This document shows positions 475-10,374 of a stretch of 64,000 bases of DNA, piece by piece; the stretch's first letter is position 1; each line of letters opens with the position of its first letter. The DNA lies in sequence record MT710307.1; one strand, given 5' to 3'. The notes under the pieces are model-generated. The model had not been told where the DNA came from. It ran no database searches and saw only the letters and a list, made by a program, of their open reading frames with translations. Position numbers and translations under genes: made by a program.

Positions 475-486
475 GGAGTTTCACAG

Positions 487-825
487 ATGTCTTTTCAGGA
501 TAAACCGCTGATGGTGATTTACAACAAGCGATACACGCTTGATGAAATCGTCGCTGCACTCGGCAACGAACGCATTCCAAAAATCTCGATTCTGAAGGAT
601 GCTATTGACAACGTTCAGATTCACCAATGGGATGGGTCTAACCACTGTACCGTAGCCGTCGTTACCACCCGCGGTCATGTCTGCACGATGGACACATGGC
701 AAGAACCTAACGCAGAAAACCTGTACAGGGTTCTGAATGGTGCGTTGGAACACGCGTTGAAGAATGCAGCTCGGGCGTGGCTCGGTTCGCAAATCAACGG
801 TCTGTCCGACAACGTAGCGTTCTAA
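487..825 (+). CDS. hypothetical protein
   Basis: 112-aa ORF, GGGAG RBS upstream, directly follows the previous gene. Confidence 0.7.
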   Translation: MSFQDKPLMVIYNKRYTLDEIVAALGNERIPKISILKDAIDNVQIHQWDGSNHCTVAVVTTRGHVCTMDTWQEPNAENLYRVLNGALEHALKNAARAWLGSQINGLSDNVAF

Positions 826-833
826 AAAAGTCT

Positions 834-858
834 AATTACAAGAATACCTTGTGATATG
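834..858 (+). promoter_or_regulatory. putative phage promoter AATTAC-N15-TATG
   Basis: AATTAC 834-839 and TATG 855-858; same spacing as 4389-4413. TATG (G at +1) is the phiKZ late consensus. Confidence 0.5.
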
Positions 859-871
859 CTGAGAGGCGCAC

Positions 872-1249
872 ATGAAACTTTTCCACGTTTCTCGTGATTC
901 GTTTGTGAAGCCGGGTGTCGTGGCAACTGCGATTATCTGCGCAGAATCTCACGAACGTGCAATACGCCACTGGCCGCTGATTGACACAGCGATGCAGCTC
1001 GAAGTTGTCGAGATTGCACCCGCTCCAGGAAGTCAGCTACCCGGCGTGTTGGTGTCCACCGAATTTTGGGGACAAGGTCGGCCCGGAAGTTTGTCAACGA
1101 AACACCCAGAGCGAAAAATCTTTATCGTCTGTGTGGAGCGTGGCGAAGAAACAAAACTCAAGGTCACCCCATTAGAGGAATATCGTGGGGCACATCCTGA
1201 CCATGTGTTTTCTGGCATTGACCCGGATACGCAAATGCCAGAGATGTAG
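872..1249 (+). CDS. hypothetical protein (N-terminus similar to 1395..1616)
   Basis: 125-aa ORF with GAGAGG RBS; MKLFHVSR...IICAESHERAI. Confidence 0.7.
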   Translation: MKLFHVSRDSFVKPGVVATAIICAESHERAIRHWPLIDTAMQLEVVEIAPAPGSQLPGVLVSTEFWGQGRPGSLSTKHPERKIFIVCVERGEETKLKVTPLEEYRGAHPDHVFSGIDPDTQMPEM

Positions 1250-1255
1250 AATTTT

Positions 1256-1331
1256 GGGGGTATAGTTCAATTGGCAGAATGTCGGTCTCCAAAACCGAAG
1301 GTTCGAGGTTCGAGACCTCGTGCCCCCGCCA
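1256..1331 (+). tRNA. trnW: tRNA-Trp(CCA)
   Basis: Cloverleaf: GGGGGTA/TGCCCCC acceptor, loop CT-CCA-AA, TTCGAGA T-loop, encoded CCA. Confidence 0.95.
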
Positions 1332-1394
1332 AATTTAGCCAACAGGAATGTGAGAAACCGCGGAAGACCAAATAGTCAATCGCTGGAGAATCTC

Positions 1395-1616
1395 ATGAAC
1401 CTGTATTTGCTAGAACGTCAAGACGATGTCGGTTACGACGAGTTTGATTCCATAGTCGTTGCAGCTCCTTCGGAGGGTGTAGCGCGCGCAATTCGTCCAA
1501 GGGGTGGTTGGGTTTACGGTGAGGCATGGGATGAAGCGGAAACGCTGACCTGCACAAACATCGGAACCACACACCTCCCAATCGGGATTGTTCATGAATC
1601 GTTCAACGCAGGCTGA
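1395..1616 (+). CDS. small hypothetical protein
   Basis: GGAG RBS then ATG at 1395 (MNLYLLERQDDVGYDEFDSIVVAAPSE...), in frame with the listed 1320..1616 ORF. Confidence 0.75.
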   Translation: MNLYLLERQDDVGYDEFDSIVVAAPSEGVARAIRPRGGWVYGEAWDEAETLTCTNIGTTHLPIGIVHESFNAG

Positions 1617-1621
1617 ATACC

Positions 1622-1639
1622 GGTGGGCTTCGGCCCACC
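1622..1639 (+). other. C(UUCG)G hairpin between CDS and tRNA-Cys (processing or termination signal)
   Basis: GGTGGGC-TTCG-GCCCACC; no U-tract. Confidence 0.5.
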
Positions 1640-1646
1640 ACACCTT

Positions 1647-1720
1647 GGGGCGCTGGCCGAGTGGTTAGGCGCTGGATTGCAAATCCTGTTACCGCGGTTC
1701 GATTCCGCGGCGTCCCTCCA
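1647..1720 (+). tRNA. trnC: tRNA-Cys(GCA)
   Basis: GGGGCGC/GCGTCCC acceptor, loop TT-GCA-AA, U73 discriminator, encoded CCA. Confidence 0.93.
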
Positions 1721-1860
1721 AATCTTCTGTCTCGCCCGACAGATATACTTTACAAAAAAACCCGTAGAGCCTTTCGGGGGTGAAGCTAGTTGGAGTGGTT
1801 GTTCACTCTACGGTCTTCTACTCCTGGGCGCTGGCTCACCCACCTAAAGGAATTTTTAAA

Positions 1861-2307
1861 ATGGTACTTGGTCTCTTTGGTATTGGCAAGAAAAAAGCAA
1901 AACGCGCTGTTACTGAAATCAAAAAATTCGAAAAGCGTGATCTGGCACAGGCCGTAGTTAACGCTGCTTACCTGGTCGCGTTCGCCGATGGCGAACTGGA
2001 ATCGTCTGAGAAAGTGAAAATCGAACAGGTGCTGCGCACTAACCCGGTGCTGGCGAACTTCACTTCTGAAATCAACACGATCGCTTCTGAAATCATCGGC
2101 AAGCTGGAAACCGACATCCGCATCGGCCGTCGTTCAGCCCTGCGTGAAATCGAAGACGTCAAAGGCGATCAGCGCGAATGCGAAGACGTCATGGACGTAG
2201 CAGTAGCTATCGCACTGGCTGATGGCGAAATCGAGCCGGAAGAAATGAAGGTTCTGGAGCAGATCGCTGGCGTGCTGGGCGTTCGTCTGGAAAATCACCT
2301 GGACTAA
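1861..2307 (+). CDS. terB: TerB-family (tellurite resistance-like) protein
   Basis: AxADGxxxxxE motif twice (AFADGELESSE, ALADGEIEPEE), ending VLEQIAGVLG. AAGGA RBS before ATG 1861. Confidence 0.85.
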   Translation: MVLGLFGIGKKKAKRAVTEIKKFEKRDLAQAVVNAAYLVAFADGELESSEKVKIEQVLRTNPVLANFTSEINTIASEIIGKLETDIRIGRRSALREIEDVKGDQRECEDVMDVAVAIALADGEIEPEEMKVLEQIAGVLGVRLENHLD

Positions 2308-2310
2308 GCC

Positions 2311-2493
2311 ATGAAGCTGAAAACCAAGTTATACATCGGGGCCGCGTTGCTACTGATGCTGCTTGGCAACTTCGTTGGGCGAGCCTTTACGTTAATCGCC
2401 TACGTAGCTGTAATCGGCGTAGTAGCCTATCTGGTCTGGCCTGTCATCAAGAAGTTTGCGGCGAAGTCGCAGGCGAAGGTGAAAGGCAGGTAG
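2311..2493 (+). CDS. small membrane protein
   Basis: 60 aa, two hydrophobic segments flanked by Lys-rich ends. Confidence 0.7.
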   Translation: MKLKTKLYIGAALLLMLLGNFVGRAFTLIAYVAVIGVVAYLVWPVIKKFAAKSQAKVKGR

Positions 2494-2499
2494 TAATTC

Positions 2500-2537
2500 G
2501 GTGCGGGGGTCGTTCCCTCCGCACCACCCTTTTCTTC
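2500..2537 (+). terminator. putative intrinsic terminator/attenuator
   Basis: GGTGCGG...CCGCACC stem followed by a pyrimidine-rich tract. Confidence 0.5.
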
Positions 2538-2559
2538 TCATCTAAAAATAGGTATAACC

Positions 2560-3399
2560 ATGAGAAAGGTGCTTTTCGGAATACTTGCAGCGTTGACGTT
2601 TAGCATGTCCGCCGTAGCGGCTGACGAAGTAGTCATTACCACAGGACAGCAGGGCCTGACCTATAACTCGGTCTATGGCGTTAATCTGGCCGGTGCCATC
2701 AGCGAGTTCGGTACTCGTGCACGGGTCATCCCGTCGAAGGGGTCGTTAGACAACCTCGACAAAGTTGCCGCCGGTGAAGCCCAGATTGGTTTCACGCAGG
2801 CAGACGCTTTCCAGTTCTGGCGTGCTAAGCACCCGAACGAAGCGCAGAACGTTGACATCGTCGGTCAGCTGGCCCGTGAATGTGTATGGGTCGCTGTCAA
2901 GAAAGGCGGCAAAGTCAAAGATGCGAAAGATTTAACCGATGGCGTGAAAATCGCAGTCGGTGAACCGGACTCTGGCTCATACGCCAGTTGGCAATACCTG
3001 CAACAGTTGGTGAAAGAGTATTCCAAAGCGGAAACTTACGCCAAGGGCGGTATCCGTTCGTTGTCCAAAGTGGCAACGGGTGAATACGACGCTTTCCTGT
3101 GGGTATCTGCGCCGGATAAAAGCAACAAATTCCTCGAAGCGGTCAATCAAGACAGTTCTGGTTTAGAGCTGATTGACATGAGCACATGGAACGTCAACGA
3201 CAAACTGCCTAACGGTCAGTCTGTTTACACGAAAGAAACGGCCAAGACAGACAAGACCGCGTTCTTTGGTAAGAAAGTTGATGTCCCCTGCACCACCACA
3301 CTCGTCGTGGCTAACACTGACGCTGGTGATGATCTGCTCGAAACCGTTTCTACCATCCTCCTGAAAAATAACTCACGAGTGATGGGGGACAAAAAATAA
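2560..3399 (+). CDS. TAXI-family TRAP solute-binding-like protein with signal peptide
   Basis: Signal peptide MRKVLFGILAALTFSMSAVA; SKGSLDNLDKV..GEAQIGFTQAD and KIAVGEPDSGS are TAXI-like motifs. Confidence 0.75.
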   Translation: MRKVLFGILAALTFSMSAVAADEVVITTGQQGLTYNSVYGVNLAGAISEFGTRARVIPSKGSLDNLDKVAAGEAQIGFTQADAFQFWRAKHPNEAQNVDIVGQLARECVWVAVKKGGKVKDAKDLTDGVKIAVGEPDSGSYASWQYLQQLVKEYSKAETYAKGGIRSLSKVATGEYDAFLWVSAPDKSNKFLEAVNQDSSGLELIDMSTWNVNDKLPNGQSVYTKETAKTDKTAFFGKKVDVPCTTTLVVANTDAGDDLLETVSTILLKNNSRVMGDKK

Positions 3400-3405
3400 A
3401 AATAT

Positions 3406-4020
3406 GTACTGACCCAGTGCATCTTTTCGGGCTGGGTAGGGTTGATGTCCCTACCTGCGCGGTGTTCGTTAAGGCTGGTAACGTTCGCTAAGACCTATCG
3501 CATACCCGTAAGTCGATAGCAGCCGGTTACACAAAGAACTATCCATTGCGGTAGGTAACCGACCGTTCACGATCTCATTAGGTGAGCAAATAATCTATGC
3601 AAGGACTTCTAGGATTTGTGCTCGACATGATGGGGAGCTTACGCCGCCTCATCAAGCAGTTACGAATCTGGAAGCTTGCCCATTACTGGTTTACAGGCGA
3701 ACTGGCATCTCGTGAGAGGGCCACATGCAAACTGCGTATTTACATTAGTATGTTCACTGCGGTGAGCATAGGTCAAGCACCGGAACGATAAGCCGGACAG
3801 CTACGCCTGTAAAATACAATCTGGAAAATCATAATGGGATTAAGTTCCCAGATTTGAAAAAGTGGCTGTGTGCCACTGTAGGCGCGGTACCTCATACGGC
3901 CGGTACGCCACAAAGGTAATGTGAAAGGGGTTGGTGCTTGGAGGCGCTAAGACCGGCGGATACGCTGGCTCAGAAGAAGAAGTCCATCAACCCCGTTCTC
4001 ACCTGAGTAACACCCTTTAC
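3406..4020 (+). ncRNA. candidate large structured non-coding RNA (~615 nt)
   Basis: No credible ORF; starts at the G of TATG (3403-3406); many hairpins plus long-range helices 3690-3699/3804-3813, 3927-3936/3985-3994 and 3580-3586/3998-4004. Confidence 0.65.
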
Positions 4021-4055
4021 AGCGTGTTGCTTATATATGCGAAAGCGAGGTGAAC

Positions 4056-4382
4056 ATGGGAACGTATCGTGAAGGCCCTGAAAGCACGGTGACTCACCGT
4101 AGTCATGATTACTCTGTGGATGCATTGCTGGATATAGCGGAACGTCATAGCCTCGTTCAAATTCCAGTGTCTAGAATAGAATGGATTTTAAACGAGACTA
4201 CGCTCGACGATGAGCGGGTTAAGAATGCAGATACGGATTATCCAATCATCGTGCTGCACGAAGGAAGTTTGTATATTGTATTAGACGGTGCCCATCGCCT
4301 TGCGAAGGCGGTAGCCGAAGGCAAAGACACCATCGCAGCCAAGATATTGGTGCCTGCGAATCTACCGAAGCCGGTACGATAA
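4056..4382 (+). CDS. ParB/Srx N-terminal-like domain protein
   Basis: YPIIV...IVLDGAHRLAKA is the ParB/sulfiredoxin DGxHR signature; GAGGTG RBS. Confidence 0.75.
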   Translation: MGTYREGPESTVTHRSHDYSVDALLDIAERHSLVQIPVSRIEWILNETTLDDERVKNADTDYPIIVLHEGSLYIVLDGAHRLAKAVAEGKDTIAAKILVPANLPKPVR

Positions 4383-4388
4383 AAGTCT

Positions 4389-4413
4389 AATTACAAGTTT
4401 ACACTGTATTATG
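4389..4413 (+). promoter_or_regulatory. putative promoter of the tRNA/ncRNA array (AATTAC-N15-TATG)
   Basis: AATTAC 4389-4394, TATG 4410-4413; the predicted +1 G is the first base of a long hairpin. Confidence 0.55.
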
Positions 4414-4492
4414 TCGGAAACCCGATTTGATGTTGCACAGGGCGTTACGCTGCGGCGTTTGCCGGTGTGCAGGGTTAGGTCGGGATTCTGGC
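4413..4492 (+). ncRNA. 80-nt rod-like hairpin (leader or small RNA)
   Basis: GTCGGAA/TTCTGGC, CCCGATTTGA/TTAGGTCGGG, TGCACA/TGTGCA and ACGC-TGCG-GCGT nested; many G-U pairs. Confidence 0.5.
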
Positions 4493-4500
4493 ACCTATTC

Positions 4501-4586
4501 GGGGGTGTTCCAGAGCGGGCAAATGGAGCAGACTGTAAATCTGTTGACTTCGGTCTTCGGTGGTTCAAATCCATCCACCCCCACCA
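4501..4586 (+). tRNA. trnY: tRNA-Tyr(GTA)
   Basis: GGGGGTG/CACCCCC acceptor, loop CT-GTA-AA, long variable arm, encoded CCA. Confidence 0.95.
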
Positions 4587-4739
4587 ATTACGAGAACGTC
4601 GGCCTGCGGTTGAGGATTAGTCTCCTTTACTAGCGCCGATGGGATTCCCTCCGTCTGCGGGGAGTAACGTCCGGTCAGGGCGAAGCAATCCTGACCTGAG
4701 TGTGCTGTCGACTACAGCATGCAAGCAGAACCAAACAGT

Positions 4740-4814
4740 TGGGGTATAGCCAAGCGGTAAGGCCCAGGGCTTTGATCCCTGTATGCCTAGGTTCGATTCC
4801 TAGTGCCCCTGCCA
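4740..4814 (+). tRNA. trnQ: tRNA-Gln(TTG)
   Basis: CAGGG-CTTTGAT-CCCTG anticodon arm, TTCGATT T-loop, encoded CCA; U1:U72 mismatch. Confidence 0.92.
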
Positions 4815-4820
4815 CACAAC

Positions 4821-5036
4821 GGTACCTGTCACAGCAGCCCTTGGGCTTACGCGATGATGACTGGCCGCCCATTTCCGGGTAACACATTCCTGCCAGCGTG
4901 CTATTGCCGCGAAGGTTTGTCCCCGGTATCGTGCGTTATTCGGGTCTACCCACGGTCTGCGGACGGTGCGCTGATGTCTCGATATACGCCATAGAGCAGC
5001 CTTGAGAACTCCGTGAGATTCGGAGAGGTACCACCC
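4821..5036 (+). ncRNA. tRNA-ended RNA with a ~180-nt internal body
   Basis: GGTACCT (4821-4827) pairs with AGGTACC (5026-5032), followed by ACC; T-arm-like CTCCG-TGAGATT-CGGAG (5009-5025). Confidence 0.55.
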
Positions 5037-5113
5037 ATTCTTGTGTTTCCTTATCCTGAAGACATTCTTAAGACAAATCTATTTTATGGTCGAGGAAGCA
5101 CAGAACCCATTTT

Positions 5114-5188
5114 AGGACTGTAGTTCAGTGGGAGAACGCCGCCCTGTCACGGCGGAGGTCGCGGGTTCGAAACCCGTCAGTCCTGCCA
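5114..5188 (+). tRNA. trnD: tRNA-Asp(GTC)
   Basis: AGGACTG/CAGTCCT acceptor, loop CT-GTC-AC, G73, encoded CCA. Confidence 0.95.
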
Positions 5189-5196
5189 TTTTCAGT

Positions 5197-5272
5197 TGCG
5201 TCTTAGCTCAGTTGGTAGAGCGCACCCCTGATAAGGGTGAGGTCACTGGTTCAAGTCCAGTAGATGCAACCA
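5197..5272 (+). tRNA. trnI: tRNA-Ile(GAT)
   Basis: CACCC-CTGATAA-GGGTG anticodon arm, encoded CCA. Confidence 0.95.
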
Positions 5273-5279
5273 GTATTGC

Positions 5280-5356
5280 ATTCCCGTCATCTAGTTGGTC
5301 CAGGATACGACACTTTCACTGTCGGTACACGAGTTCAAATCTCGTCGGGAATACCA
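5280..5356 (+). tRNA. trnE: tRNA-Glu(TTC)
   Basis: ATTCCCG/CGGGAAT acceptor, loop CT-TTC-AC, encoded CCA. Confidence 0.93.
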
Positions 5357-5361
5357 TTTGT

Positions 5362-5452
5362 AGAGAATTGACTGAGATGGCTTAAGGTGCTCCCCTGCTA
5401 AGGGAGTGTATGCGTAAGTGTACCATTGGTTCGAATCCAATATTCTCTGCCA
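5362..5452 (+). tRNA. trnS: tRNA-Ser(GCT)
   Basis: AGAGAAT/ATTCTCT acceptor, loop CT-GCT-AA, long variable arm, G73, encoded CCA. Confidence 0.93.
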
Positions 5453-5458
5453 CATTGC

Positions 5459-5561
5459 GCCGGTGTAAGGAAGTGGCCAAACCTAAGTAGGTCGTGAGGT
5501 AAAAGCTCACCACTGAACACCCTAAGGGTTCCTGAGGTTCGAGTCCTCAGTACCGGCACCA
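5459..5561 (+). ncRNA. tRNA-like RNA (Leu-type body) with an elongated anticodon arm
   Basis: GCCGGTG/TACCGGC acceptor, A73, CCA, TTCGAGT T-loop, long variable arm; anticodon loop replaced by a 20-nt bulged hairpin. Confidence 0.7.
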
Positions 5562-5566
5562 TGTTC

Positions 5567-5734
5567 TCTTGCTGTGGGAAATAGAAGCGAACGTAGAAAC
5601 GCCGGTTAGCTCAAAGCTTAGAGCGTCTTATCTTCGGATGAGAAGGTTGGGGGCGCAACCCGAAATCCCTATCGGCAACGGCCTGCTTGTCAGGATTAGA
5701 AACATCTACGTGGATGGGTACTTCTACAGCAAGA
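5567..5734 (+). ncRNA. nested-helix RNA containing a tRNA-like domain capped by UUCG
   Basis: 13-bp outer helix 5567-5579/5722-5734; inner ACGTAGA/TCTACGT; tRNA-like core 5601-5677 with a GCTC/GAGC D-stem. Confidence 0.55.
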
Positions 5735-5941
5735 ACAAAACAGTGGGAGCATTGTCCACAGCGACACCGGCAAAGGTTTCGGCCTTGCGGGTTGGGCGGA
5801 AGCCCGATGTTCCCCCGAACGCTGGCCTTCTGGCCAATACAGTGAAAGCTTACCCTTGCCGTTGATCACCTCTTCTGCTGCTGCCAACACACTGTATAGC
5901 TGGAATCAGTCCTGCCTTAAATGGCAAGCGTTCACCCTTTC

Positions 5942-6019
5942 GGTTCCCCAAGGCGGCTTGGGAAGTTACCTTCTGGCTCTATTAGGTAACGGTGTGGTTC
6001 AACTCCACGGGAATCACCA
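5942..6019 (+). ncRNA. atypical tRNA-like RNA with a 12-nt anticodon-position loop
   Basis: GGTTCCC/GGGAATC acceptor, A73, CCA, GTGG-TTCAACT-CCAC T-arm, GTTACCT/AGGTAAC stem with a 12-nt loop. Confidence 0.65.
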
Positions 6020-6025
6020 AACAAT

Positions 6026-6102
6026 GGCTCCGTAGCTCAGTTGGTAGAGCCCACTTCCCCGGCGGAAGTTAGGCGTCACAGGTTCGAGTCCTGTCGGAGC
6101 AA
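6026..6102 (+). pseudogene. tRNA-like element with a non-canonical anticodon loop, no encoded CCA
   Basis: Canonical D-arm (AGCTCAGTTGGTAGAGC) and T-arm (ACAGG-TTCGAGT-CCTGT); ACTTCC-CCGGC-GGAAGT lacks U33 and purine 37. Confidence 0.65.
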
Positions 6103-6103
6103 G

Positions 6104-6175
6104 AGCACTGCTGTTAAGTTGGTTAACACCCGACTCATAATCGGATATTCGCACGTTCGATTCGTGCCAGTGCTC
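6104..6175 (+). tRNA. tRNA-Met/Ile2(CAT), atypical
   Basis: CCGA-CTCATAA-TCGG anticodon arm, GCACG-TTCGATT-CGTGC T-arm; acceptor extendable to 8 bp (G6103-C6175); CCA not encoded. Confidence 0.8.
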
Positions 6176-6186
6176 GCCCTTATTTA

Positions 6187-6262
6187 GACTCTGTAGTTCA
6201 GTTGGTAGAACGGTGGACTGTTAATCCATATGTCGCAGGTTCAAGTCCTGCCAGAGTCGCCA
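6187..6262 (+). tRNA. trnN: tRNA-Asn(GTT)
   Basis: GACTCTG/CAGAGTC acceptor, loop CT-GTT-AA, G73, encoded CCA. Confidence 0.95.
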
Positions 6263-6533
6263 CATTTTGCATTGCCCGAGTCCCGAATGACATTCCGGAA
6301 AAATATCATCCATGGTCAAGGGCAGTGCAGAACCAAAATCCCAGCCTTCGCAGAAAAAGCTTACCTGCATTAGCGGTCCCCTGCGGGGGTTGGGTACCAC
6401 CTTTGTCCGTTTTGTTTTTTTCTCTTAATTGTCTGGCGATAATGGCGGGAACAAAACGGGTAAAGCCCTAGCGGGGGAAAAGCCGCTAACAACAACAGAA
6501 GCAGTAAAAACAGAAGTAAAAGCAGGAGTAGTT

Positions 6534-7346
6534 ATGTTTACTATCTTACGCAAAATCAATGGTAACCGCACACCAACTGAACACGAATCCCCAACGCTGG
6601 GTGATACGAAGTCACAAGTGTTCAAAGATGCGATGTCGCTCTTGACCGAATCCAATAACGTGCATAACTGCATGGATTCTGGGATGGATGCGAAGCCGTG
6701 GATTAACGGCAAACCCAAACCGATTGAGGAATGGGTAGAACGCTTTGAGAAAGTATTCGGTTCGACCGACGTAGACAACCAAGAGCTGGTTTCTCTGGTC
6801 AGTGAACTCGCGCCGGGGATGTTTGATAAATCGAATGCGCGTTTTGCATCCGACTTTGGTCAGTTGCAAGAAGCCTTCCTGAAAGACACCGGACAAACCA
6901 TCATCTGGAAATGTCCGAAAGGACTCCCGATTGATATCCAGTTCCAAGACATCCCCCGTCAGTCTGTTGAAACGCTACACACTACTCTCGATTTCATCGA
7001 AGCGGATGAATTGAAGTTTGCTGTGTTCAACAGCAAGGCGTTGTGGGATGGGTATAACTCCGCTGAACTGTTTGGCGGTGAAGCCACCGAGATTTCCTCG
7101 GTAGAACTCCAACACGTTTACTTTGACGATACGGCGATGCCGCAAGAAGCGGTACTTAAAGCCAACCGTCGTGGTACCCGCACTATGGAACAAGTCATTG
7201 GGGTGCTTGCTTATGGCAGCTCCGAGCAACCTGACCCAACCACGGGCAACGTGCCGGTCACAGTGATGACCTACGAGTTTATCTACCAAGGCGATGAAGT
7301 CTACATTACGAACCGTCACGGTAAGACTGTGGACTCCATCCGTTAA
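6534..7346 (+). CDS. hypothetical protein
   Basis: AGGAG RBS before ATG 6534 (MFTILRKING...); the listed ORF 6429..7346 is an upstream extension of it. Confidence 0.8.
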   Translation: MFTILRKINGNRTPTEHESPTLGDTKSQVFKDAMSLLTESNNVHNCMDSGMDAKPWINGKPKPIEEWVERFEKVFGSTDVDNQELVSLVSELAPGMFDKSNARFASDFGQLQEAFLKDTGQTIIWKCPKGLPIDIQFQDIPRQSVETLHTTLDFIEADELKFAVFNSKALWDGYNSAELFGGEATEISSVELQHVYFDDTAMPQEAVLKANRRGTRTMEQVIGVLAYGSSEQPDPTTGNVPVTVMTYEFIYQGDEVYITNRHGKTVDSIR

Positions 7347-7449
7347 GCATTAGCATGCTCGCTAATACCCGCCCTGAGGATTGGCCTCCTCATGCTTGAA
7401 GGGCGACTCTCCTGTAGTACGCTTTGTAAGTCGACGTAAATCGGTACGC

Positions 7450-7494
7450 CCTCTCCCCGAAAAGGGAGAGGGTAGTATCGTATATTTTTTTGGA
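7450..7494 (+). terminator. intrinsic terminator
   Basis: CCCTCTCCC-CGAAAA-GGGAGAGGG stem with a downstream T-run. Confidence 0.55.
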
Positions 7495-7496
7495 TA

Positions 7497-7512
7497 TATA
7501 TTACCTAGGTGA
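7497..7512 (+). promoter_or_regulatory. early (virion RNAP) promoter
   Basis: Exact TATATTAC (phiKZ early consensus) followed by CTAGGTGA; same pattern at five other intergenic sites. Confidence 0.7.
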
Positions 7513-7561
7513 GATTAAACTATAATCTTTTACCTATCATTAGACTTTCGAGGATAAACTT

Positions 7562-8542
7562 ATGCGTATCACCCCAATGTCAGCCCATGAAACTTTCGCT
7601 ATTCGTGGCTATAGTCCTGAAGAAGGCAAGCGTATCCGTGGTTATCTCCCGCGTCGCTTTGGTGACATCAACAATGCGCTGCCGTTGACGAACGCCGAGT
7701 TCTGGTTGGCGTACGAGTGCATGAAACACTACAATGACAATCCCAGTGACCGTGGCCGCTTTTACAGCGTCGGGCCGTTTAGCTTCCAAGCCAATGGCAA
7801 AGTCAATTACCGCTCTGAGAAGTTAAACGAAGACTTCTCCATGGTGGAGTTCATTCGCCACTTCGGCGATACGGTCTTCACCGACTTCGATGCTGAACTG
7901 GGCATGAAGGTTCCACGCACTAACGCAGATGGTTCGCTGGTAATGAAGAACCGTATGGTCGCCACGCGTCTGGTAGAGATTGAGAAGCAAGCCCAACCGA
8001 AAGAAGATTATTCCAGCTGGCATTCCAACAGCTGGATGAACTTCCCAGTGGGTCCTCTCTCCTTACCACCGACTGGGATGATATTACCGGAAACTATCCT
8101 GATGGCATCTCTACATGGTGAGATGGCGCAAGAGTATGCCAATACGCAGAGCGGGCGTATGTTCCATCCCACGATTGATTACAAATGGGTGGCCACGTAC
8201 GTTTACCTGAAGCGTTTATACCATGCGCGTGACCGTGAGTTCGGTCAGGATTATTATTCAGTTCGCTCATCCATTGACATGAACCTGCGCTTCCGTTCAA
8301 GTAACTCACTCTATCCGAGCGATGTCATGACAGCCCCGCACTTCTTCCACATTGATGGGGATCGTGTCATGTCCAAGAACGGCATCATTAACTGCCCACG
8401 CATCAACAACATGAATCCGATGGGATTCTACGAAAGGCTTTATCGCTTCAACAACAACGGCCATGTTTCCGCTATCACAACCATCCCCGCTACACTCTTC
8501 GAAGAGTACAGTGAAGATGAATGGAAAGCAGTCTTAGCATAA
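7562..8542 (+). CDS. hypothetical (early) protein
   Basis: 326-aa ORF, GAGGA RBS, downstream of the early promoter. Confidence 0.85.
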   Translation: MRITPMSAHETFAIRGYSPEEGKRIRGYLPRRFGDINNALPLTNAEFWLAYECMKHYNDNPSDRGRFYSVGPFSFQANGKVNYRSEKLNEDFSMVEFIRHFGDTVFTDFDAELGMKVPRTNADGSLVMKNRMVATRLVEIEKQAQPKEDYSSWHSNSWMNFPVGPLSLPPTGMILPETILMASLHGEMAQEYANTQSGRMFHPTIDYKWVATYVYLKRLYHARDREFGQDYYSVRSSIDMNLRFRSSNSLYPSDVMTAPHFFHIDGDRVMSKNGIINCPRINNMNPMGFYERLYRFNNNGHVSAITTIPATLFEEYSEDEWKAVLA

Positions 8543-8548
8543 CTTTAG

Positions 8549-8578
8549 AGCGGGGGTAAAACCCCGCTTTATTTTTTT
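8549..8578 (+). terminator. intrinsic terminator
   Basis: AGCGGGG/CCCCGCT stem plus T-tract. Confidence 0.8.
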
Positions 8579-8613
8579 ACTTGAATACCTGATTTATATA
8601 GGAGGGTAACATC

Positions 8614-9054
8614 ATGAAATCCAATTTGGCTTACAGCTTTAACATCGTCCCATTCTATCACCCTATCGAAATGACCCGTGCGTTAACCGACGGTATTTTA
8701 CCTGAGACGTTTATACCGAAAGGTCGCTACGATGAAATGTTGCTGGAGACAGTGCTCCCCATCATCATTAGCCATCCGCTGTTCGGAGAGTTTTCGTCTA
8801 AGCTGACACCCCAAGAAGGGTCGGCCTTCCGTAAAGGTGATGATGTGCCGGTGATTACCACCACGTATAACATCTCACGTCAGGAAGCGAAAGCCATGGC
8901 TCGCGACCCGGATGTTTTCTTCCGGTTCATGAAGTCGATGGCGGAAGCTTTAGATAAACGCGCCCTGCCGTTTGAGGAAATCTTCGCGGTGCTCCTCGAC
9001 GCTATCTGTGCAAGTGACTTTGCCATGTTCCACAACACGGGCAGTCTGCACTAA
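8614..9054 (+). CDS. hypothetical protein
   Basis: 146 aa, AGGAGG RBS. Confidence 0.85.
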   Translation: MKSNLAYSFNIVPFYHPIEMTRALTDGILPETFIPKGRYDEMLLETVLPIIISHPLFGEFSSKLTPQEGSAFRKGDDVPVITTTYNISRQEAKAMARDPDVFFRFMKSMAEALDKRALPFEEIFAVLLDAICASDFAMFHNTGSLH

Positions 9055-9120
9055 AAATTACGCCAGAGTCCCTCCCTATAGGGAATCTGTGCCTGTATAG
9101 ATTCCAATAGGAGATGAACC

Positions 9121-9507
9121 ATGAAGACGACACTGCGTCCGATGGACGTGATTCTCGCTCACCCCGACACGCTCAGTAAAATCGCACCACAGTCAGAACT
9201 CGACCGCCGTTTATTAGAAAGCCTAGAATGGGGATTTACCCTCCACCCAGATGAGGTTTCCAACACACGCGTTCTTGATGTTTCTGACACCGTAGTGATT
9301 GACTGGACAGAACGTGAAGGTTGTGACGATGTGCGAGAGTACGTGGCGCAAGCAACGGTACCTCCACGCGTACCCATCGCTGGACTGGCTGAACACACCA
9401 TTTCTCTGCGCCGTTTATGCAACGCTCAAGATGAGATTGTTCGCAACGGTGAAGCGTGGAGTTATGGTACTGCCAGTCACCTGAAGAACGTGCTCCTTCA
9501 GGCGTAA
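9121..9507 (+). CDS. hypothetical protein
   Basis: 128 aa, AGGAG RBS. Confidence 0.8.
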   Translation: MKTTLRPMDVILAHPDTLSKIAPQSELDRRLLESLEWGFTLHPDEVSNTRVLDVSDTVVIDWTEREGCDDVREYVAQATVPPRVPIAGLAEHTISLRRLCNAQDEIVRNGEAWSYGTASHLKNVLLQA

Positions 9508-9559
9508 AAAAGAAAAGAAGATAACCCCTGCCGAAGCAGGGGTTGGTCTTTCTTTTTTT
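9508..9559. terminator. bidirectional terminator between convergent genes
   Basis: AACCCCTGC-CGAA-GCAGGGGTT with an A-tract before and a T-tract after. Confidence 0.85.
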
Positions 9560-9561
9560 GT

Positions 9562-10374
9562 CTACGATTTGAAACGGCCACCGGACATGTAGTTGTAGCG
9601 GTTGCCGATGTCGTCGTTGTGAACCAGCGCACGCTTCATGGCAGGCAAGGTGTCGTCGAACATCTGACCGGCATCCGAATACCCTTCCACCACATTACGG
9701 AACGCACCGAACTCCATACCGTTCTCAATCTTACCGGAATCCATATCGAAGATGAGTTGGTTATAGATGTACTGCTTCGTGGCAAAGACCGCCAAGTCAG
9801 CCACACGCGGATAGAACGGCGTCTTGATTTCGTTCAGTTCTTCACTGAGCTTATACATGATCGCAATCTTCGTGGCGTAGACAAACATACCGGGGTCTTT
9901 AATCTTGATGGTGTTCGGCCCCAGCACCCGCACCTCAGGAGAACTGATGCGCGGTAAAGCAGAGTTCGAATCGACGACTAACTGCGTCGCGGCGAGCGCA
10001 CCGGTGGTGGCCCCATCCAGATACGAGCCCGCAGGCGGGAGTGTATACGCCTGACCGGCCACCGGCGTAACTGCGATGTGCGCTTCGAGGATTTCGCGGC
10101 CACCCGTTTTAAATTCATCGATGTGGTAAATGCGCGAGTAGTAGTCTTCCGTATCGTTCTCATAGGGCAACCCCTGTAAGTCAAGTTCGGTATATTGCCC
10201 CATGCGGGACACTTCGGGAATCACATACTCACGAATCACCTTATCCATGATTTCGTTTTCAATGCTACTGGCCACGCCCAACATCCGGAGGTTCTCTGGT
10301 GTAAAGGCGACTTTCAGCAGCGGTAAAGGAATGTCTCGCCGTATTTTGCGGAGACAATAATCTATCACGTTCAT
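9562..10374 (-). CDS. conserved jumbo-phage protein, probably virion structural
   Basis: 270-aa ORF with GGAG RBS and an upstream TATG on the minus strand; function inferred only from context. Confidence 0.7.
   Translation of the reverse strand: MNVIDYCLRKIRRDIPLPLLKVAFTPENLRMLGVASSIENEIMDKVIREYVIPEVSRMGQYTELDLQGLPYENDTEDYYSRIYHIDEFKTGGREILEAHIAVTPVAGQAYTLPPAGSYLDGATTGALAATQLVVDSNSALPRISSPEVRVLGPNTIKIKDPGMFVYATKIAIMYKLSEELNEIKTPFYPRVADLAVFATKQYIYNQLIFDMDSGKIENGMEFGAFRNVVEGYSDAGQMFDDTLPAMKRALVHNDDIGNRYNYMSGGRFKS

What the first reader, a model, noticed from the sequence alone, without database searches (positions are those of the whole stretch)
4413..6400. tRNA array in which canonical tRNAs alternate with anticodon-disabled tRNA mimics
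Eight recognisable tRNAs are interspersed with at least five tRNA-like RNAs. These keep acceptor, D or T arms, several with encoded CCA, but each has the anticodon region changed in a different way. The changes are a 180-nt body, an extended arm, a UUCG cap, a 12-nt loop and a 5-nt loop. Intact stems with damage confined to the anticodon arm do not look like random decay. c(UGCG)g tetraloops recur near 3758, 4451, 4657, 4958 and 6381. Hypotheses: decoys or inhibitors for host anticodon nucleases and tRNA-sensing defences, aminoacyl donors for non-ribosomal transfer, or processing/export carriers for the phage nucleus.
Basis: partly seen in the sequence, partly recalled or inferred. Interest (0 to 1): 0.75.

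Follow-up and report, generated by a model that had tools for sequence, protein, structure and literature searches.

The report
Conserved non-decoding tRNA mimics in phage array
The "spacers" in this jumbo phage's tRNA gene cluster are conserved structured RNAs, several of which keep the top half of a tRNA but cannot read codons; they look like larger relatives of phage T4's two long-unexplained small RNAs.

Summary
The window is Salmonella phage pSal-SNUABM-04 (Machinavirus).
- L, 4821-5036, with a long body.
- A, 5459-5561, with an extended anticodon arm.
- B, 5601-5678, capped by UUCG.
- C, 5942-6018, with a 12-14-nt loop.
- P, 6026-6102, with a 5-nt loop or a C33 loop.

There are also further conserved structured modules that are not tRNA-like (H0, G1, Hp2, M, Hp3, Z). 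Most modules end in a closing helix followed by ACC(A).

Homologues in Machina-, Seoul-, Erskine- and Wellingtonvirus phages keep these helices through compensatory changes. The C2 cloverleaf and the P-slot acceptor and T arms are 100% paired, with 5 and 8 covarying pairs. The anticodon loops vary in length and sequence and lack U33. This is selection on structure, not decay.

Best reading: the modules are co-transcribed with the tRNAs and excised like tRNAs by host RNase P, 3' trimming and CCA repair. That would yield stable RNAs that do not decode, the same kind as T4 RNAC and RNAD. Function is unproven. The anticodon-nuclease decoy idea fits poorly, because the anticodon loops are the least conserved part. 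No described family or paper was found for these RNAs.

The parts
4413..4495 (+). H0: an ~80-nt leader hairpin with a c(UGCG)g apex. The closing helix is GUCGG/CUGGC, followed by ACC. It is preceded by a conserved TAT(T/A)ATG motif.
   Evidence: The fold gives -51 kcal/mol with z = -5.8. The same termini and a length of 78-83 nt recur in 9 lineages including SPN3US, although the interior sequence is replaced.
4501..4586 (+). tRNA-Tyr(GTA), canonical.
4597..4665 (+). G1: a conserved branched hairpin (closing helix CGUCGGC/GCCGAUG) plus a second hairpin. Further hairpins follow up to 4722, and the segment ends ..GCAGAACCAAAC.
   Evidence: A consensus fold (RNAalifold) with pEa_SNUABM_6, _4, _9 and ChrisDB gives 29 pairs, 7 of them compensatory. 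Three are consecutive pairs in the closing helix.
4740..4814 (+). tRNA-Gln(TTG), canonical.
4821..5036 (+). L: a long-body tRNA-like RNA. It has a 7-bp acceptor-like helix (4821-4827 with 5026-5032), an adjacent 5-bp hairpin with the T-loop-type loop UGAGAUU (5009-5025), a tail ACCC, and a ~180-nt branched body that includes a c(UGCG)g hairpin at ~4951-4968.
   Evidence: Homologues of 122-160 nt occur in Stratton/phiEaH2, Kwan, pEa_SNUABM_29 and IMG/VR and metagenome contigs. Their closing helix is GACAC(Y)/(R)GUGUC in place of GGUACC. The hairpin is invariant. The same hairpin sequence is the L4 T-loop arm of cobalamin riboswitches (PMC6158498).
5039..5108 (+). Hp2: a hairpin ending ..CACAGAA + CCC. 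It is a paralogue of Hp3.
   Evidence: It matches the post-Asn hairpin of pEa_SNUABM_4, Caitlin and pEa_SNUABM_29 at 73-78% identity.
5114..5452 (+). Four canonical tRNAs: Asp 5114-5188, Ile(GAT) 5197-5272, Glu 5280-5356 and Ser(GCT) 5362-5452.
5459..5561 (+). A: a class-II-like tRNA mimic. It has a 7-bp acceptor, a 3-bp D stem with an 11-nt loop containing GG, a 29-nt anticodon arm (5-bp stem with loop GUAAAAG on top of an internal loop), a long variable arm, a canonical T arm and an encoded ACCA.
   Evidence: ARAGORN finds it only with introns allowed. Rfam tRNA gives no match at E<=10. The fold has z = -2.6. Copies in pEa_SNUABM_43/42 are identical. The pEa_SNUABM_29 copy has an identical interior, compensatory acceptor changes (7 to 8 bp) and T-stem changes (A-U to G-C), and unrelated flanks.
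5601..5678 (+). B: a tRNA-like RNA with an acceptor helix, a tRNA-type D arm and a 7-bp 'anticodon' stem capped by UUCG. Its T region is degenerate and its tail is AAC.
   Evidence: See the folds. In pEa_SNUABM_43 the capped stem is CUUACC-CUAGC-GGUAAG, a different sequence that is still a stem with a 5-nt loop. Stratton has a 120-nt element with the same D arm and an intact T arm.
5679..5816 (+). 'mid': a run of small hairpins, 93-97% conserved among the close Machinavirus relatives. The architecture is unresolved.
   Evidence: The ORF 5569-5865 that covers it (annotated as Machina gp16) is frameshifted in three relatives.
5817..5938 (+). M: a closing helix GAACGCU/AGCGUUC (an alternative 5' strand lies at 5843-5849), an adjacent hairpin UGCC-UUAAAU-GGCA, and a tail ACCC.
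   Evidence: A 35-nt 3' block is 92-97% identical in ChrisDB, pEa_SNUABM_9 and pEa_SNUABM_4, and 79% over 63 nt in Caitlin. The closing helix and the hairpin covary in Caitlin and in contig L017.
5942..6018 (+). C: a tRNA-like RNA with a 6-7-bp acceptor, a 5-bp D stem capped by GCGG, a 6-bp 'anticodon' stem with a 12-14-nt loop, the canonical T loop UUCAACU and an encoded ACCA.
   Evidence: Stems are kept through G-C to A-U and G.U to U-A changes in relatives that are only 81-85% identical. In pEa_SNUABM_6 it is truncated by an HNH endonuclease gene.
6026..6102 (+). P: a tRNA-derived mimic directly upstream of tRNA(CAU). The acceptor, D and T arms are intact. The anticodon arm is a 6-bp stem with a 5-nt loop (or a 7-nt loop with C33 and C37). 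There is no CCA; it ends AAG.
   Evidence: Rfam tRNA scores 38.9 bits and ARAGORN calls 'Pro(cgg)'. Every lineage has a tRNA-like element with a defective anticodon loop at this slot. Its acceptor and T arms are 100% paired, with 8 of 11 pairs compensatory.
6103..6178 (+). tRNA(CAU), annotated as Ile (Ile2) or Met. No CCA is encoded; the tail is GCCC.
6187..6262 (+). tRNA-Asn(GTT), canonical.
6265..6335 (+). Hp3: a hairpin with a 13-bp closing helix and conserved internal sequence, followed by CCA.
   Evidence: The fold of 6263-6400 has z = -4.2. A consensus fold of Hp3 and Z over 8 phages, including SPN3US, gives 34 pairs, 15 of them compensatory.
6340..6399 (+). Z: the last module. The closing helix CCCAGC/GUUGGG is stacked on a CCCC-UGCG-GGGG hairpin, followed by U + ACCA and then a U-rich tract that may be the terminator.
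   Evidence: An ACCA tail also follows the helix in pEa_SNUABM_10, pEa_SNUABM_4 and Caitlin.

Best explanation
The non-tRNA parts of this array are genes for structured RNAs that selection maintains.

**Anatomy (shown).** Four modules (A, B, C, P) are cloverleaf-like tRNA mimics. A, C and P keep the acceptor helix, the T arm and a GG-containing D loop; B keeps the acceptor and D arms, but its T region is degenerate. All four have an anticodon arm that cannot decode. L and M keep only the acceptor-like helix stacked on a T-like hairpin, which closes a large body. H0, Hp2, Hp3 and Z are hairpin or branched RNAs. Most modules end in ACC(A), the look of a tRNA 3' end.

**Processing (inferred).** The cluster is transcribed as one precursor together with the tRNAs. 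Host RNase P cuts at the 5' side of each closing helix, because it reads the acceptor/T stack and the 3' RCCA. Host exonucleases and the CCA-adding enzyme finish the 3' ends. The products would be stable small RNAs of about 70-220 nt.

**Function (inferred, weakest step).** The RNAs then act in trans through factors that recognise the upper half of a tRNA (acceptor end, T arm, elbow) and not the anticodon. Those factors could be host tRNA-processing enzymes or tRNA-directed defence enzymes. P and its counterpart C2 may in addition serve the maturation of the CCA-less tRNA(CAU) that they always precede.

This is the same kind of thing as T4 RNAC and RNAD, whose role is still unknown.
For: **Structure under selection**
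- C2 cloverleaf: 21 pairs, 100% paired, 5 compensatory, 0 of 500 shuffles as good.
- P-slot acceptor and T arms: 11 pairs, 100% paired, 8 compensatory.
- L closing helix: replaced wholesale between clades, 98.9% paired.
- G1: 7 compensatory pairs.
- Hp3 and Z: 15 compensatory pairs.
- H0: same ends and length with replaced interior in 9 lineages.
- A: differs between genera only by compensatory stem changes.

**Non-decoding**
- P has C33 and C37.
- C2 loops are 6-8 nt without U33.
- The SPN3US P can close to a 3-nt loop.
- B is tetraloop-capped and C has a 12-14-nt loop.
- A has 12 extra nucleotides in the anticodon arm.

**tRNA-like ends**
- Eight of 11 modules have CC within 3 nt after the closing helix (P about 7e-6).
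- The tails are invariant in homologues.
- The real tRNA(CAU) also has only GCCC.

**Independence from context**
- A, L and M sit next to different neighbours in different phages.

**Not coding, not recent tRNA debris**
- The only annotated ORF is frameshifted in relatives.
- Only A and P share sequence with tRNAs.

**Precedent**
- T4 rnaC has a canonical T arm at its 3' end behind a long body, and rnaD ends in GCACCA. Both lie in the T4 tRNA cluster.
- RNAC and RNAD are made, and their roles are unknown (PMC3014915, PMC9697503).
- RNase P depends on a 3' RCCA and on the tRNA elbow (PMC12710915, PMC4919913).
Against: - There are no expression or end-mapping data for any of these RNAs. Processing and stability are inferred from anatomy alone.
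- Covariation rests on 5-9 lineages of one phage group. Many changes are shared by descent.
- The P-slot elements may not be orthologous. Machina's looks like a former tRNA-Leu(UAA) with a long variable arm, so some 'covariation' may come from different source tRNAs.
- B, G1 and P lack the ACC tail.
- Single-sequence folds of B, C and P are not better than shuffles (z -0.9 to -1.4).
- Modules come and go between close relatives. C is cut by a homing endonuclease gene in pEa_SNUABM_6, so none of the accessory modules is essential.
- No partner protein, target or phage-encoded tRNA enzyme was identified. Neighbouring genes are all of unknown function.
Confidence: 0.55

Rival explanations
1. The modules are cis-acting punctuation only. 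They are folding insulators and RNase P/RNase E entry sites that make the polycistronic tRNA precursor fold and mature correctly. The excised pieces are by-products with no function of their own.
For: - P or C2 is always fixed directly upstream of tRNA(CAU), which lacks an encoded CCA.
- Hp modules always start right after a CCA end.
- Spacers between units are short, and the leader ACAAYG recurs.
- Accessory modules are dispensable.
Against: - A, L and M move between contexts as self-contained units with exact boundaries.
- Unpaired sequence blocks are far more conserved than structure alone needs. The M block is 92-97% identical where H0 is about 70%, and L and Hp have invariant loops.
- Many tRNAs in the same arrays sit back to back with no such insulators.
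Confidence: 0.25
2. The modules are decaying tRNA pseudogenes and recombination scars in a fast-turnover array, with no selection on them.
For: - tRNA content differs between close relatives, and HNH homing endonuclease genes sit in the arrays.
- P is clearly tRNA-derived.
- B has a degenerate T arm.
- P-slot anticodon regions cannot be aligned.
Against: - Every stem cell is paired in C2 and in the P-slot acceptor and T arms, with many two-sided changes.
- The modules are conserved across four genera, whereas surrounding non-coding DNA is 65-70% identical or unalignable.
- ACC tails are enriched.
- H0, G1, L, Hp2, Hp3, B, M, C and Z have no detectable sequence similarity to any tRNA.
Confidence: 0.08
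3. One reading: the mimics are decoys or inhibitors for anticodon nucleases (PrrC, RloC, VapC, PARIS-type).
For: - tRNA-like shape.
- The locus is accessory and fast-changing, as is typical of counter-defence genes.
- Phage tRNAs are known to counter such systems (general knowledge; reviews found).
Against: - These nucleases read a particular anticodon loop. In the mimics that loop is the least conserved part and is often a tetraloop, a 5-nt loop or a 12-nt loop.
- Nothing in them resembles the Lys, Tyr or fMet anticodon loops that the known enzymes cut.
Confidence: 0.07
4. Some P and C2 elements are odd but working tRNAs. For example, they could be Leu(UAA)-derived tRNAs whose altered loops escape a nuclease yet still decode.
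For: - Machina P has a long variable arm and a 7-nt loop UUUAAUU, with U33 and UAA at positions 34-36.
- The 7-nt C2 loops of pEa_SNUABM_4 and Caitlin carry UAA at positions 34-36.
Against: - The pEa_SNUABM_4 and Caitlin loops lack U33 and a purine at 37, and the Machina loop lacks a purine at 37.
- Loop length varies from 3 to 14 nt between orthologues.
- The window's P has CCCGGCG.
- The D arm of C and C2 is a 5-bp stem with a 4-5-nt loop.
- No CCA is encoded, and the element abuts the next tRNA.
Confidence: 0.04
5. Part of the region is protein-coding: the 98-aa ORF 5569-5865, annotated as gp16 in Machina, Huxley and Parshik.
For: - The ORF is open in the window, Machina and Parshik.
- It matches phrog_24101. 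That match most likely comes from the gp16-type ORFs annotated in Machina, Huxley and Parshik rather than from independent homologues.
Against: - It has a TTG start and no ribosome-binding site.
- A 1-nt indel shifts the frame of the last third in pEa_SNUABM_43, _10 and _6.
- Most substitutions change the amino acid.
- It has no Pfam domain, and it overlaps the B cloverleaf.
Confidence: 0.01

Closest known systems
Phage T4 RNAC (species 1) and RNAD (species 2), the small stable RNAs of the T4 tRNA gene cluster
   Same: - They lie in the tRNA cluster on the tRNA strand.
- rnaC is a long body (139 nt) closed next to a canonical T arm at the 3' end, like L and M. rnaD ends in ..GCACCA, like H0, Hp3 and Z.
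- Their function is unknown (PMC3014915, PMC9697503).
- A homing endonuclease gene sits in the cluster in both cases: segB in T4, HNH genes here.
   Different: - No similarity to rnaC or rnaD was apparent by eye; no alignment was run.
- There are about eleven modules here against two in T4.
- Several modules here are full cloverleaf mimics with deliberately non-decoding anticodon arms.
- One mimic is fixed upstream of tRNA(CAU).
- Expression and stability are shown for T4 and only inferred here.
Canonical tRNA (Rfam RF00005) and tRNA pseudogenes
   Same: A, C and P have an acceptor helix, a T arm with a UUCRANY loop and a D loop containing GG. P reaches the Rfam threshold.
   Different: - None has a 7-nt anticodon loop with U33 and a purine at 37.
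- A, B, C and L give no RF00005 match even at E<=10.
- Stems are kept by compensatory change, unlike pseudogenes.
Virus-encoded tRNA-like RNAs that are processed but do not decode. Examples are the murine gammaherpesvirus 68 tRNA-like/miRNA transcripts, the mascRNA element of MALAT1 and plant-virus tRNA-like 3' ends (from general knowledge; reviews PMC5723415, PMC13191261).
   Same: In those systems a tRNA-like fold is used as a handle for the host tRNA-processing machinery and for RNA stability, not for decoding. That is the role inferred here from the anatomy.
   Different: Those are eukaryotic systems, with RNase Z and Pol III contexts. They are not arrays mixed with working tRNAs. The resemblance is recalled from memory and was not tested.
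Bacterial Y-RNA-like YrlA (Rfam RF02553) and tmRNA
   Same: Both are non-decoding RNAs that contain a tRNA-like domain.
   Different: - YrlA gives only sub-threshold hits of 23-26 bits against a threshold of 69, and these lie over real tRNAs.
- ARAGORN finds no tmRNA.
- No Ro-type protein was seen near the array, and the immediate neighbours (3597-10374) have no Pfam or named PHROG function.

Membership tests
Canonical tRNA (RF00005) | Score at or above the Rfam gathering threshold (29 bits) | tested here: not met
   P scores 38.9 bits and so meets it. A, B, C, L and M give no match even at E<=10.
Canonical tRNA (RF00005) | 5-bp anticodon stem with a 7-nt loop, U33 and a purine at position 37 | tested here: not met
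   - P: loop CCCGGCG, or a 5-nt loop.
- A: a 29-nt arm.
- B: a UUCG tetraloop.
- C: a 12-14-nt loop.
- C2: 6-8-nt loops without U33.
Canonical tRNA (RF00005) | Acceptor helix stacked on a T arm with a T-loop, and a 3' NCCA | tested here: met
   - A and C meet it fully.
- P has the helices but no CCA.
- L and M have the helix, an adjacent hairpin and ACCC.
- B has no intact T arm.
T4 RNAC/RNAD-type stable RNAs of phage tRNA clusters | Encoded inside a phage tRNA gene cluster on the tRNA strand, and not a tRNA | tested here: met
T4 RNAC/RNAD-type stable RNAs of phage tRNA clusters | A tRNA-like 3' terminus (T arm and/or ..ACCA) behind a body that is not a tRNA | tested here: met
   T4 rnaC has a GGGUUCGAAUCCC arm near its 3' end and rnaD ends GCACCA. 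In the window, L, M, H0, Hp3 and Z end in ACC(A) after a closing helix, and Hp2 in CCC(A).
T4 RNAC/RNAD-type stable RNAs of phage tRNA clusters | Accumulates as a discrete stable RNA in infected cells | not testable with these tools
   No transcript data for this phage group were found.
T4 RNAC/RNAD-type stable RNAs of phage tRNA clusters | Sequence homology to rnaC or rnaD | not tested
   No alignment was run. No similarity was apparent by eye in the sequences.
Neutral tRNA pseudogene | Stems accumulate unpaired substitutions at the same rate as loops | tested here: not met
   100% of stem cells are paired, with 5 and 8 two-sided changes. A changes only by compensatory pairs.
tmRNA | A tRNA-like domain plus a tag reading frame, detectable by ARAGORN | tested here: not met
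   ARAGORN finds no tmRNA in the window.
YrlA / bacterial Y RNA (RF02553) | Rfam score at or above 69 bits | tested here: not met
   The best scores are 25.7 and 23.4 bits, and both lie over real tRNAs.
Cobalamin riboswitch (RF00174) | A full aptamer match. This was considered because L's hairpin sequence equals the riboswitch P4-L4 arm. | tested here: not met
   The metagenome hits with the same hairpin are true RF00174 members (114.9 bits). L has no RF00174 match at E<=10 and shares only that hairpin.
Protein-coding gene (Machina gp16-like ORF 5569-5865) | Reading frame conserved among relatives | tested here: not met
   It is frameshifted in pEa_SNUABM_43, _10 and _6.

The most novel reading that the evidence does not exclude
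A whole group of enterobacterial jumbo phages (Seoul-, Machina-, Erskine- and Wellingtonvirus) carries a modular, fast-exchanging battery of non-decoding mimics of the tRNA upper half. After tRNA-type processing, these RNAs would act as sponges or decoys for host factors that read the acceptor end, T arm or elbow. Candidates are tRNA-directed toxins and defence enzymes that act on the 3' end or acceptor stem, or RNase P and the CCA-adding enzyme themselves. That would make this an RNA-based counter-defence or host-takeover system, and it would also explain T4 RNAC and RNAD.
Probability: 0.2. Interest if true: 0.85.

Novelty: new variant of a known kind. Interest (0 to 1): 0.6.

Why it matters
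- About 1.4 kb of DNA that every deposited genome of this phage group leaves blank, or annotates as a spurious ORF, appears to consist of RNA genes.
- The families defined here (H0, G1, L, Hp, A, B, M, C/C2, P, Z) come with comparative evidence. T4 RNAC and RNAD have lacked that for fifty years, so the old question of what such RNAs do becomes testable in culturable phages such as SPN3US and its E. coli-infecting relatives.
- If the RNAs act in trans on tRNA-handling enzymes, they would be a new class of phage RNA effectors.
- If they are only processing aids, they show how a phage organises a long tRNA precursor using host RNase P.
- Either way they are natural 'tRNA scaffolds' for making stable RNAs in bacteria.

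Tried and rejected
- **Rfam.** All 4227 families were searched at gathering and at E<=10 over 1-7500. Nothing but tRNAs was found; the YrlA, plastid and miRNA hits are noise over tRNAs.
- **Strict scan of my own.** A scan for a T arm plus a 7-bp acceptor found only the real tRNAs and A. It was too strict for the other mimics.
- **ARAGORN at low thresholds.** It gives many false calls in coding DNA, so only the calls for A (default threshold, introns allowed) and C (80% threshold) were used.
- **Coding explanation.** Rejected because of the frameshift in relatives.
- **A in other collections.** IMG/VR gave 12 chance matches only. The 185,579-genome collection gave none, so no host origin was found.
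- **C2 in IMG/VR.** It found only the already known phages plus two chance matches in coding DNA.
- **L hairpin in metagenomes.** Of 67 hits, most share the flanks of a cobalamin-riboswitch aptamer, and the one checked with Rfam is RF00174. Only 4 are true L elements.
- **Promoter motif.** The conserved TAT(A/T)ATG before H0 is not a recurrent motif in the window (4 sites, below chance), so no promoter claim is made. The sigma-70 and terminator scans were at chance level.
- **Neighbouring genes.** They give no functional hint.
- **Literature.** Searches for tRNA-like RNAs, pseudo-tRNAs and tRNA mimics in jumbo phages, and for SPN3US transcript data, found nothing about these elements.
- **Not done.** There was no full-genome survey for phage-encoded CCA-adding enzyme, RNA ligase or Ro-type proteins. 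No covariance-model searches were run.

Full report
**Identity of the window.** The window is the first 64 kb of Salmonella phage pSal-SNUABM-04 (MT710307.1), a 239.6-kb Machinavirus. Megablast gives 100% identity, and window coordinates equal record coordinates. The published description mentions only '10 putative tRNAs' found with tRNAscan-SE (PMC7823757). The GenBank record has no feature in any gap of the array.

**Checking the observation.** ARAGORN and Rfam agree on nine tRNA-like genes between 4413 and 6400: Tyr, Gln, Asp, Ile, Glu, Ser, 'Pro(cgg)', CAU and Asn. GenBank lists eight. It scores 38.9 bits, its loop is CCCGGCG with C at positions 33 and 37, it has no CCA, and it runs into the next tRNA.

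The other four mimics were all found:
- L, 4821-5036. A perfect 7-bp helix GGUACCU/AGGUACC closes a body of about 180 nt. It sits next to a 5-bp hairpin with a 7-nt loop and is followed by ACCC.
- A, 5459-5561. ARAGORN sees it only when introns are allowed. It has every tRNA arm, a long variable arm and an encoded ACCA, but a 29-nt anticodon arm.
- B, 5601-5678. It has an acceptor, a typical D arm and a 7-bp stem capped by UUCG. Its T region is degenerate.
- C, 5942-6018. It has an acceptor, a 5-bp D stem with a GCGG loop, a 6-bp stem with a 12-14-nt loop, a canonical T arm and ACCA.

Rfam gives no tRNA match for A, B, C or L even at E<=10, and no other family matches them. The order is not a strict alternation. 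B's damage is not limited to the anticodon arm. Much of the remaining 'spacer' is structured RNA of a different, non-cloverleaf kind.

**The UGCG motif.** CTGCGG occurs six times on the + strand between 3757 and 6386 and never on the - strand there. The window as a whole has 60 sites against 31.6 expected. Only five perfect c(UGCG)g hairpins of at least 4 bp exist in the window, and three are in this region: 3757, the apex of H0 at 4450, and 6381. The one at 4957 has a G.G mismatch here and is a perfect 7-bp stem in Machina through a G-C to A-U exchange. The one at 4604 lies inside a conserved internal structure, not at a tetraloop. c(UUCG)g hairpins with long stems are spread over the whole window. 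Stable UNCG caps are thus a general habit of this genome, and the recurrence is real but modest.

**Relatives.** Twelve related arrays were read.
- Close Machinavirus relatives, 91-94% identical: Machina, Parshik, pEa_SNUABM_43, _10 and _6.
- More distant Machinavirus: ChrisDB, Caitlin, pEa_SNUABM_9 and _4.
- Other genera: Stratton (Erskinevirus), Kwan (Wellingtonvirus), and pEa_SNUABM_29 and SPN3US (Seoulvirus).

These came. tRNA content differs even between close relatives. Whole units are gained and lost. HNH homing endonuclease genes sit inside two arrays, and in pEa_SNUABM_6 one cuts off the 3' part of C. Against this turnover the non-tRNA modules are strikingly conserved.

**Evidence for selection on structure, module by module.**
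- *H0.* An ~80-nt hairpin begins right after TAT(A/T)ATG and ends in ..CYGGC + ACC. It is present in nine lineages at 78-83 nt, although its interior is almost entirely different in the window, Caitlin and SPN3US. In the window it folds at -51 kcal/mol with z = -5.8.
- *G1.* The closing helix is CGUCGGC/GCCGAUG here and CGUAACC/GGUUACG in three other phages. The consensus fold has 7 compensatory pairs out of 29.
- *L.* Versions of 122-160 nt exist in Stratton/phiEaH2, Kwan, pEa_SNUABM_29 and uncultured contigs. The hairpin CUCCG-UGRRAUU-CGGAG and the tail CACC are invariant. The closing helix is GACAC(Y)/(R)GUGUC instead of GGUACC. Across 8 sequences, 98.9% of cells are paired and 3 pairs changed on both sides.
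- *A.* The copy in the Seoulvirus pEa_SNUABM_29 has unrelated flanks and an interior identical to the window's. Its only differences are compensatory: the acceptor changes from 7 to 8 bp and the T stem from A-U to G-C.
- *M.* A 35-nt 3' block is 92-97% identical in ChrisDB, pEa_SNUABM_9 and pEa_SNUABM_4, phages whose H0 is only about 70% identical. Its closing helix and hairpin covary in Caitlin and contig L017.
- *C.* The close relatives are only 81-85% identical here, yet stems are kept through G-C to A-U and G.U to U-A changes.
- *C2.* In the distant phages a related cloverleaf sits directly upstream of tRNA(CAU). All 21 pairs are paired in all six lineages and five pairs changed on both sides. 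None of 500 shuffles and no slid register comes close. Its 'anticodon' loop is 6, 7 or 8 nt, differs in sequence, and never has U33.
- *P slot.* In the window's clade and in SPN3US the same slot holds P-type elements. Acceptor and T arms are 100% paired with 8 of 11 pairs changed on both sides. The D, anticodon and variable regions cannot be aligned.
- *Hp3 and Z.* A consensus fold over eight phages, including SPN3US, has 34 pairs, 15 of them compensatory. Hp2 is a second copy of the Hp family.

On the available relatives it comes out against decay.

**A shared terminal design.** Eight of the eleven non-tRNA modules have CC within three bases after the comparative closing helix.
- H0: ACCU.
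- L: ACCC.
- Hp2: CCC(A).
- A: ACCA.
- M: ACCC.
- C: ACCA.
- Hp3: CCA.
- Z: U-ACCA.

The binomial probability is about 7e-6 at a generous chance rate of 0.125. These tails are invariant in homologues. The genuine tRNA(CAU) also has only GCCC.

In L and M the closing helix abuts a hairpin, as the acceptor stem abuts the T stem in a tRNA. L's hairpin loop UGAGAUU fits the T-loop pattern (U at position 1, A at position 5). The same 20-nt hairpin turned up in most of 67 metagenome hits. The flanks of those hits read like the cobalamin-riboswitch aptamer, and the one checked with Rfam is RF00174 (114.9 bits). There the hairpin is the P4-L4 arm. L4 is described as a conserved T-loop module (PMC6158498). 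L itself is not a cobalamin riboswitch.

A, C, C2 and P keep GG in the D loop and a UUCRANY T loop, the parts that build the tRNA elbow. Units are separated by short spacers, often ACAAYG.

**What the modules are not.**
- They are not coding. The 98-aa ORF 5569-5865 is annotated as gp16 in Machina and is the basis of phrog_24101. It has a TTG start, is frameshifted in three relatives, and changes mostly at the amino-acid level.
- They are not recognisable tRNA debris. Only A (T arm) and P (D and T arms) share sequence with any tRNA of the thirteen arrays.
- They are not tmRNA, Y RNA or any Rfam family.
- A was not found in 185,579 bacterial and archaeal genomes or in IMG/VR.

**Core and accessory parts.** SPN3US has the minimal array H0 - P - tRNA(CAU) - Hp3 - Z-like. 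That 336-nt core is present at 80% coverage or more in 33 phage records from Salmonella, Escherichia and Proteus hosts. P or C2 is always immediately upstream of tRNA(CAU) and ends in AAG. A, G1, L, M, B and C are accessory. They occur next to different neighbours in different phages: L after Gln, Tyr, Glu, Ser or M; A after Ser, Glu or Asn.

**How it most likely works.**
- *Shown:* conserved folds, tRNA-type termini, non-decoding anticodon arms, and same strand and cluster as the tRNAs.
- *Inferred from established knowledge:* bacterial RNase P recognises the acceptor/T stack, the elbow and a 3' RCCA (PMC4919913, PMC12710915). Each module should therefore be cut at the 5' side of its closing helix, like its tRNA neighbours. 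Host 3' exonucleases and the CCA-adding enzyme should finish the ends. The outcome would be a set of stable RNAs of 70-220 nt. A published survey reports that RNA repair systems are rarer in nucleus-forming jumbo phages, and it places CCA-adding enzymes in the other jumbo-phage groups (PMC7824862). That suggests reliance on host enzymes, but this genome was not checked.
- *Inferred, weakest step:* the accessory modules are self-contained and portable, and they carry unpaired blocks far more conserved than structure requires. I therefore favour a trans-acting role through proteins that read the upper half of tRNA. For P and C2 a cis role in maturing the CCA-less tRNA(CAU) is equally plausible.

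The anticodon-nuclease decoy idea is disfavoured because the anticodon loop is the part that is not kept.

**Comparison with what is known.** The closest known case is the pair RNAC/RNAD of phage T4. In the T4 record they lie at the end of the tRNA cluster. rnaC folds as a long body with a canonical GGGUUCGAAUCCC arm at its 3' end, and rnaD ends in GCACCA. These are the same two designs seen here. Their roles are still unknown (PMC3014915), and they are confirmed late transcripts (PMC9697503).

What differs here:
- The number of modules, about eleven against two.
- Full cloverleaf mimics with non-decoding anticodon arms.
- A fixed mimic-tRNA(CAU) pair.
- Comparative support across four genera.

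No paper describing these elements was found. The searchable library is incomplete.

**Verdict.** The finding is real and not ordinary annotation noise. It is best filed as a new and much expanded variant of a known but unexplained kind of phage RNA. Confidence is high for 'conserved structured RNAs with tRNA-type ends'. It is moderate for 'processed like tRNAs into stable RNAs'. It is low for any particular function.

**Limits.**
- There are no expression data.
- Covariation rests on 5-9 related lineages.
- P-slot elements may not be orthologous.
- The 'mid' segment 5679-5816 and the 3' half of G1 are not resolved.

Noticed in passing
window 3795-4015 (homologues e.g. L025 2438-2640, L008 2365-2570): A conserved structured non-coding RNA candidate lies upstream of the array. 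It is 71-88% identical in 12 of the 13 related phages compared; Kwan matches only a 64-nt stretch. The consensus fold has 44 pairs, 18 of them compensatory, with long invariant blocks such as GGUGCUUGGAG...GAAGAAGUCCAUCA. It has no Rfam match. In SPN3US it sits about 100 nt before H0. In Machinavirus a small ParB-like ORF (4056-4382) lies between the two.
   Followed up: partly
L009 ~4343-4440; also in L013, L007 and L006: In ChrisDB and pEa_SNUABM_4, _9 and _6, the tRNA(CAU) carries a hairpin insert of about 23 nt in the variable region (..GGGUUACCCGGCGGGUAAC..). ARAGORN does not call it at default settings. The SPN3US copy is also missed at default settings.
   Followed up: partly
L006 3655-4173 and L012 1668-2204: HNH (NUMOD4 + HNH_3) homing endonuclease genes are inserted in the arrays of pEa_SNUABM_6 and pEa_SNUABM_29. 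In pEa_SNUABM_6 the gene replaces the 3' part of element C. This parallels segB in the T4 tRNA cluster.
   Followed up: partly
window 4407-4413 and the same place in all relatives: A conserved TAT(A/T)ATG lies immediately before H0. It is kept even in Stratton and Kwan, where the hairpin itself is different. It is not a recurrent motif elsewhere in the window (4 sites, below chance), so its role as a promoter or start site is open.
   Followed up: partly
window 5569-5865; L003 2734-3030; L004 2902-3198: The ORF annotated as hypothetical protein gp16 (Machina) and gp18 (Parshik), which matches phrog_24101, overlaps elements B and 'mid'. It is frameshifted in three relatives and is probably a spurious gene call.
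   Followed up: yes
window-wide, e.g. 1628, 9536, 14612, 42100, 50311, 60123, 61951: Twelve c(UUCG)g hairpins of at least 4 bp, ten of them with stems of 7-14 bp, are spread over the window. They are probably transcription terminators or stabilisers. CTGCGG is also about twice as frequent as expected in the whole window.
   Followed up: no
window 3749-3770: A perfect 9-bp c(UGCG)g hairpin lies inside the small ORF 3597-3791 (gp8, phrog_26199), just upstream of the conserved non-coding RNA candidate.
   Followed up: no
L004 1999-2086: The Parshik record annotates the first tRNA of the array as tRNA-Asp(gtc), whereas ARAGORN calls Tyr(gta) at the same place. This looks like an annotation slip.
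   Followed up: no
L049 7877-8065 and most of L039-L105: The 20-nt hairpin of element L is identical in sequence to the P4-L4 T-loop arm found in many environmental cobalamin riboswitches. A single exact-pattern scan therefore returned mostly riboswitches.
   Followed up: yes
window 5903-5921 versus tRNA-Asp 5175-5187: The most conserved block of element M contains UCAGUCCUGCC. The same 11 bases form the 3' end of the phage's tRNA-Asp (T stem, acceptor strand, discriminator and CC). Whether this reflects origin from a tRNA fragment or pairing with tRNA-Asp was not examined.
   Followed up: no
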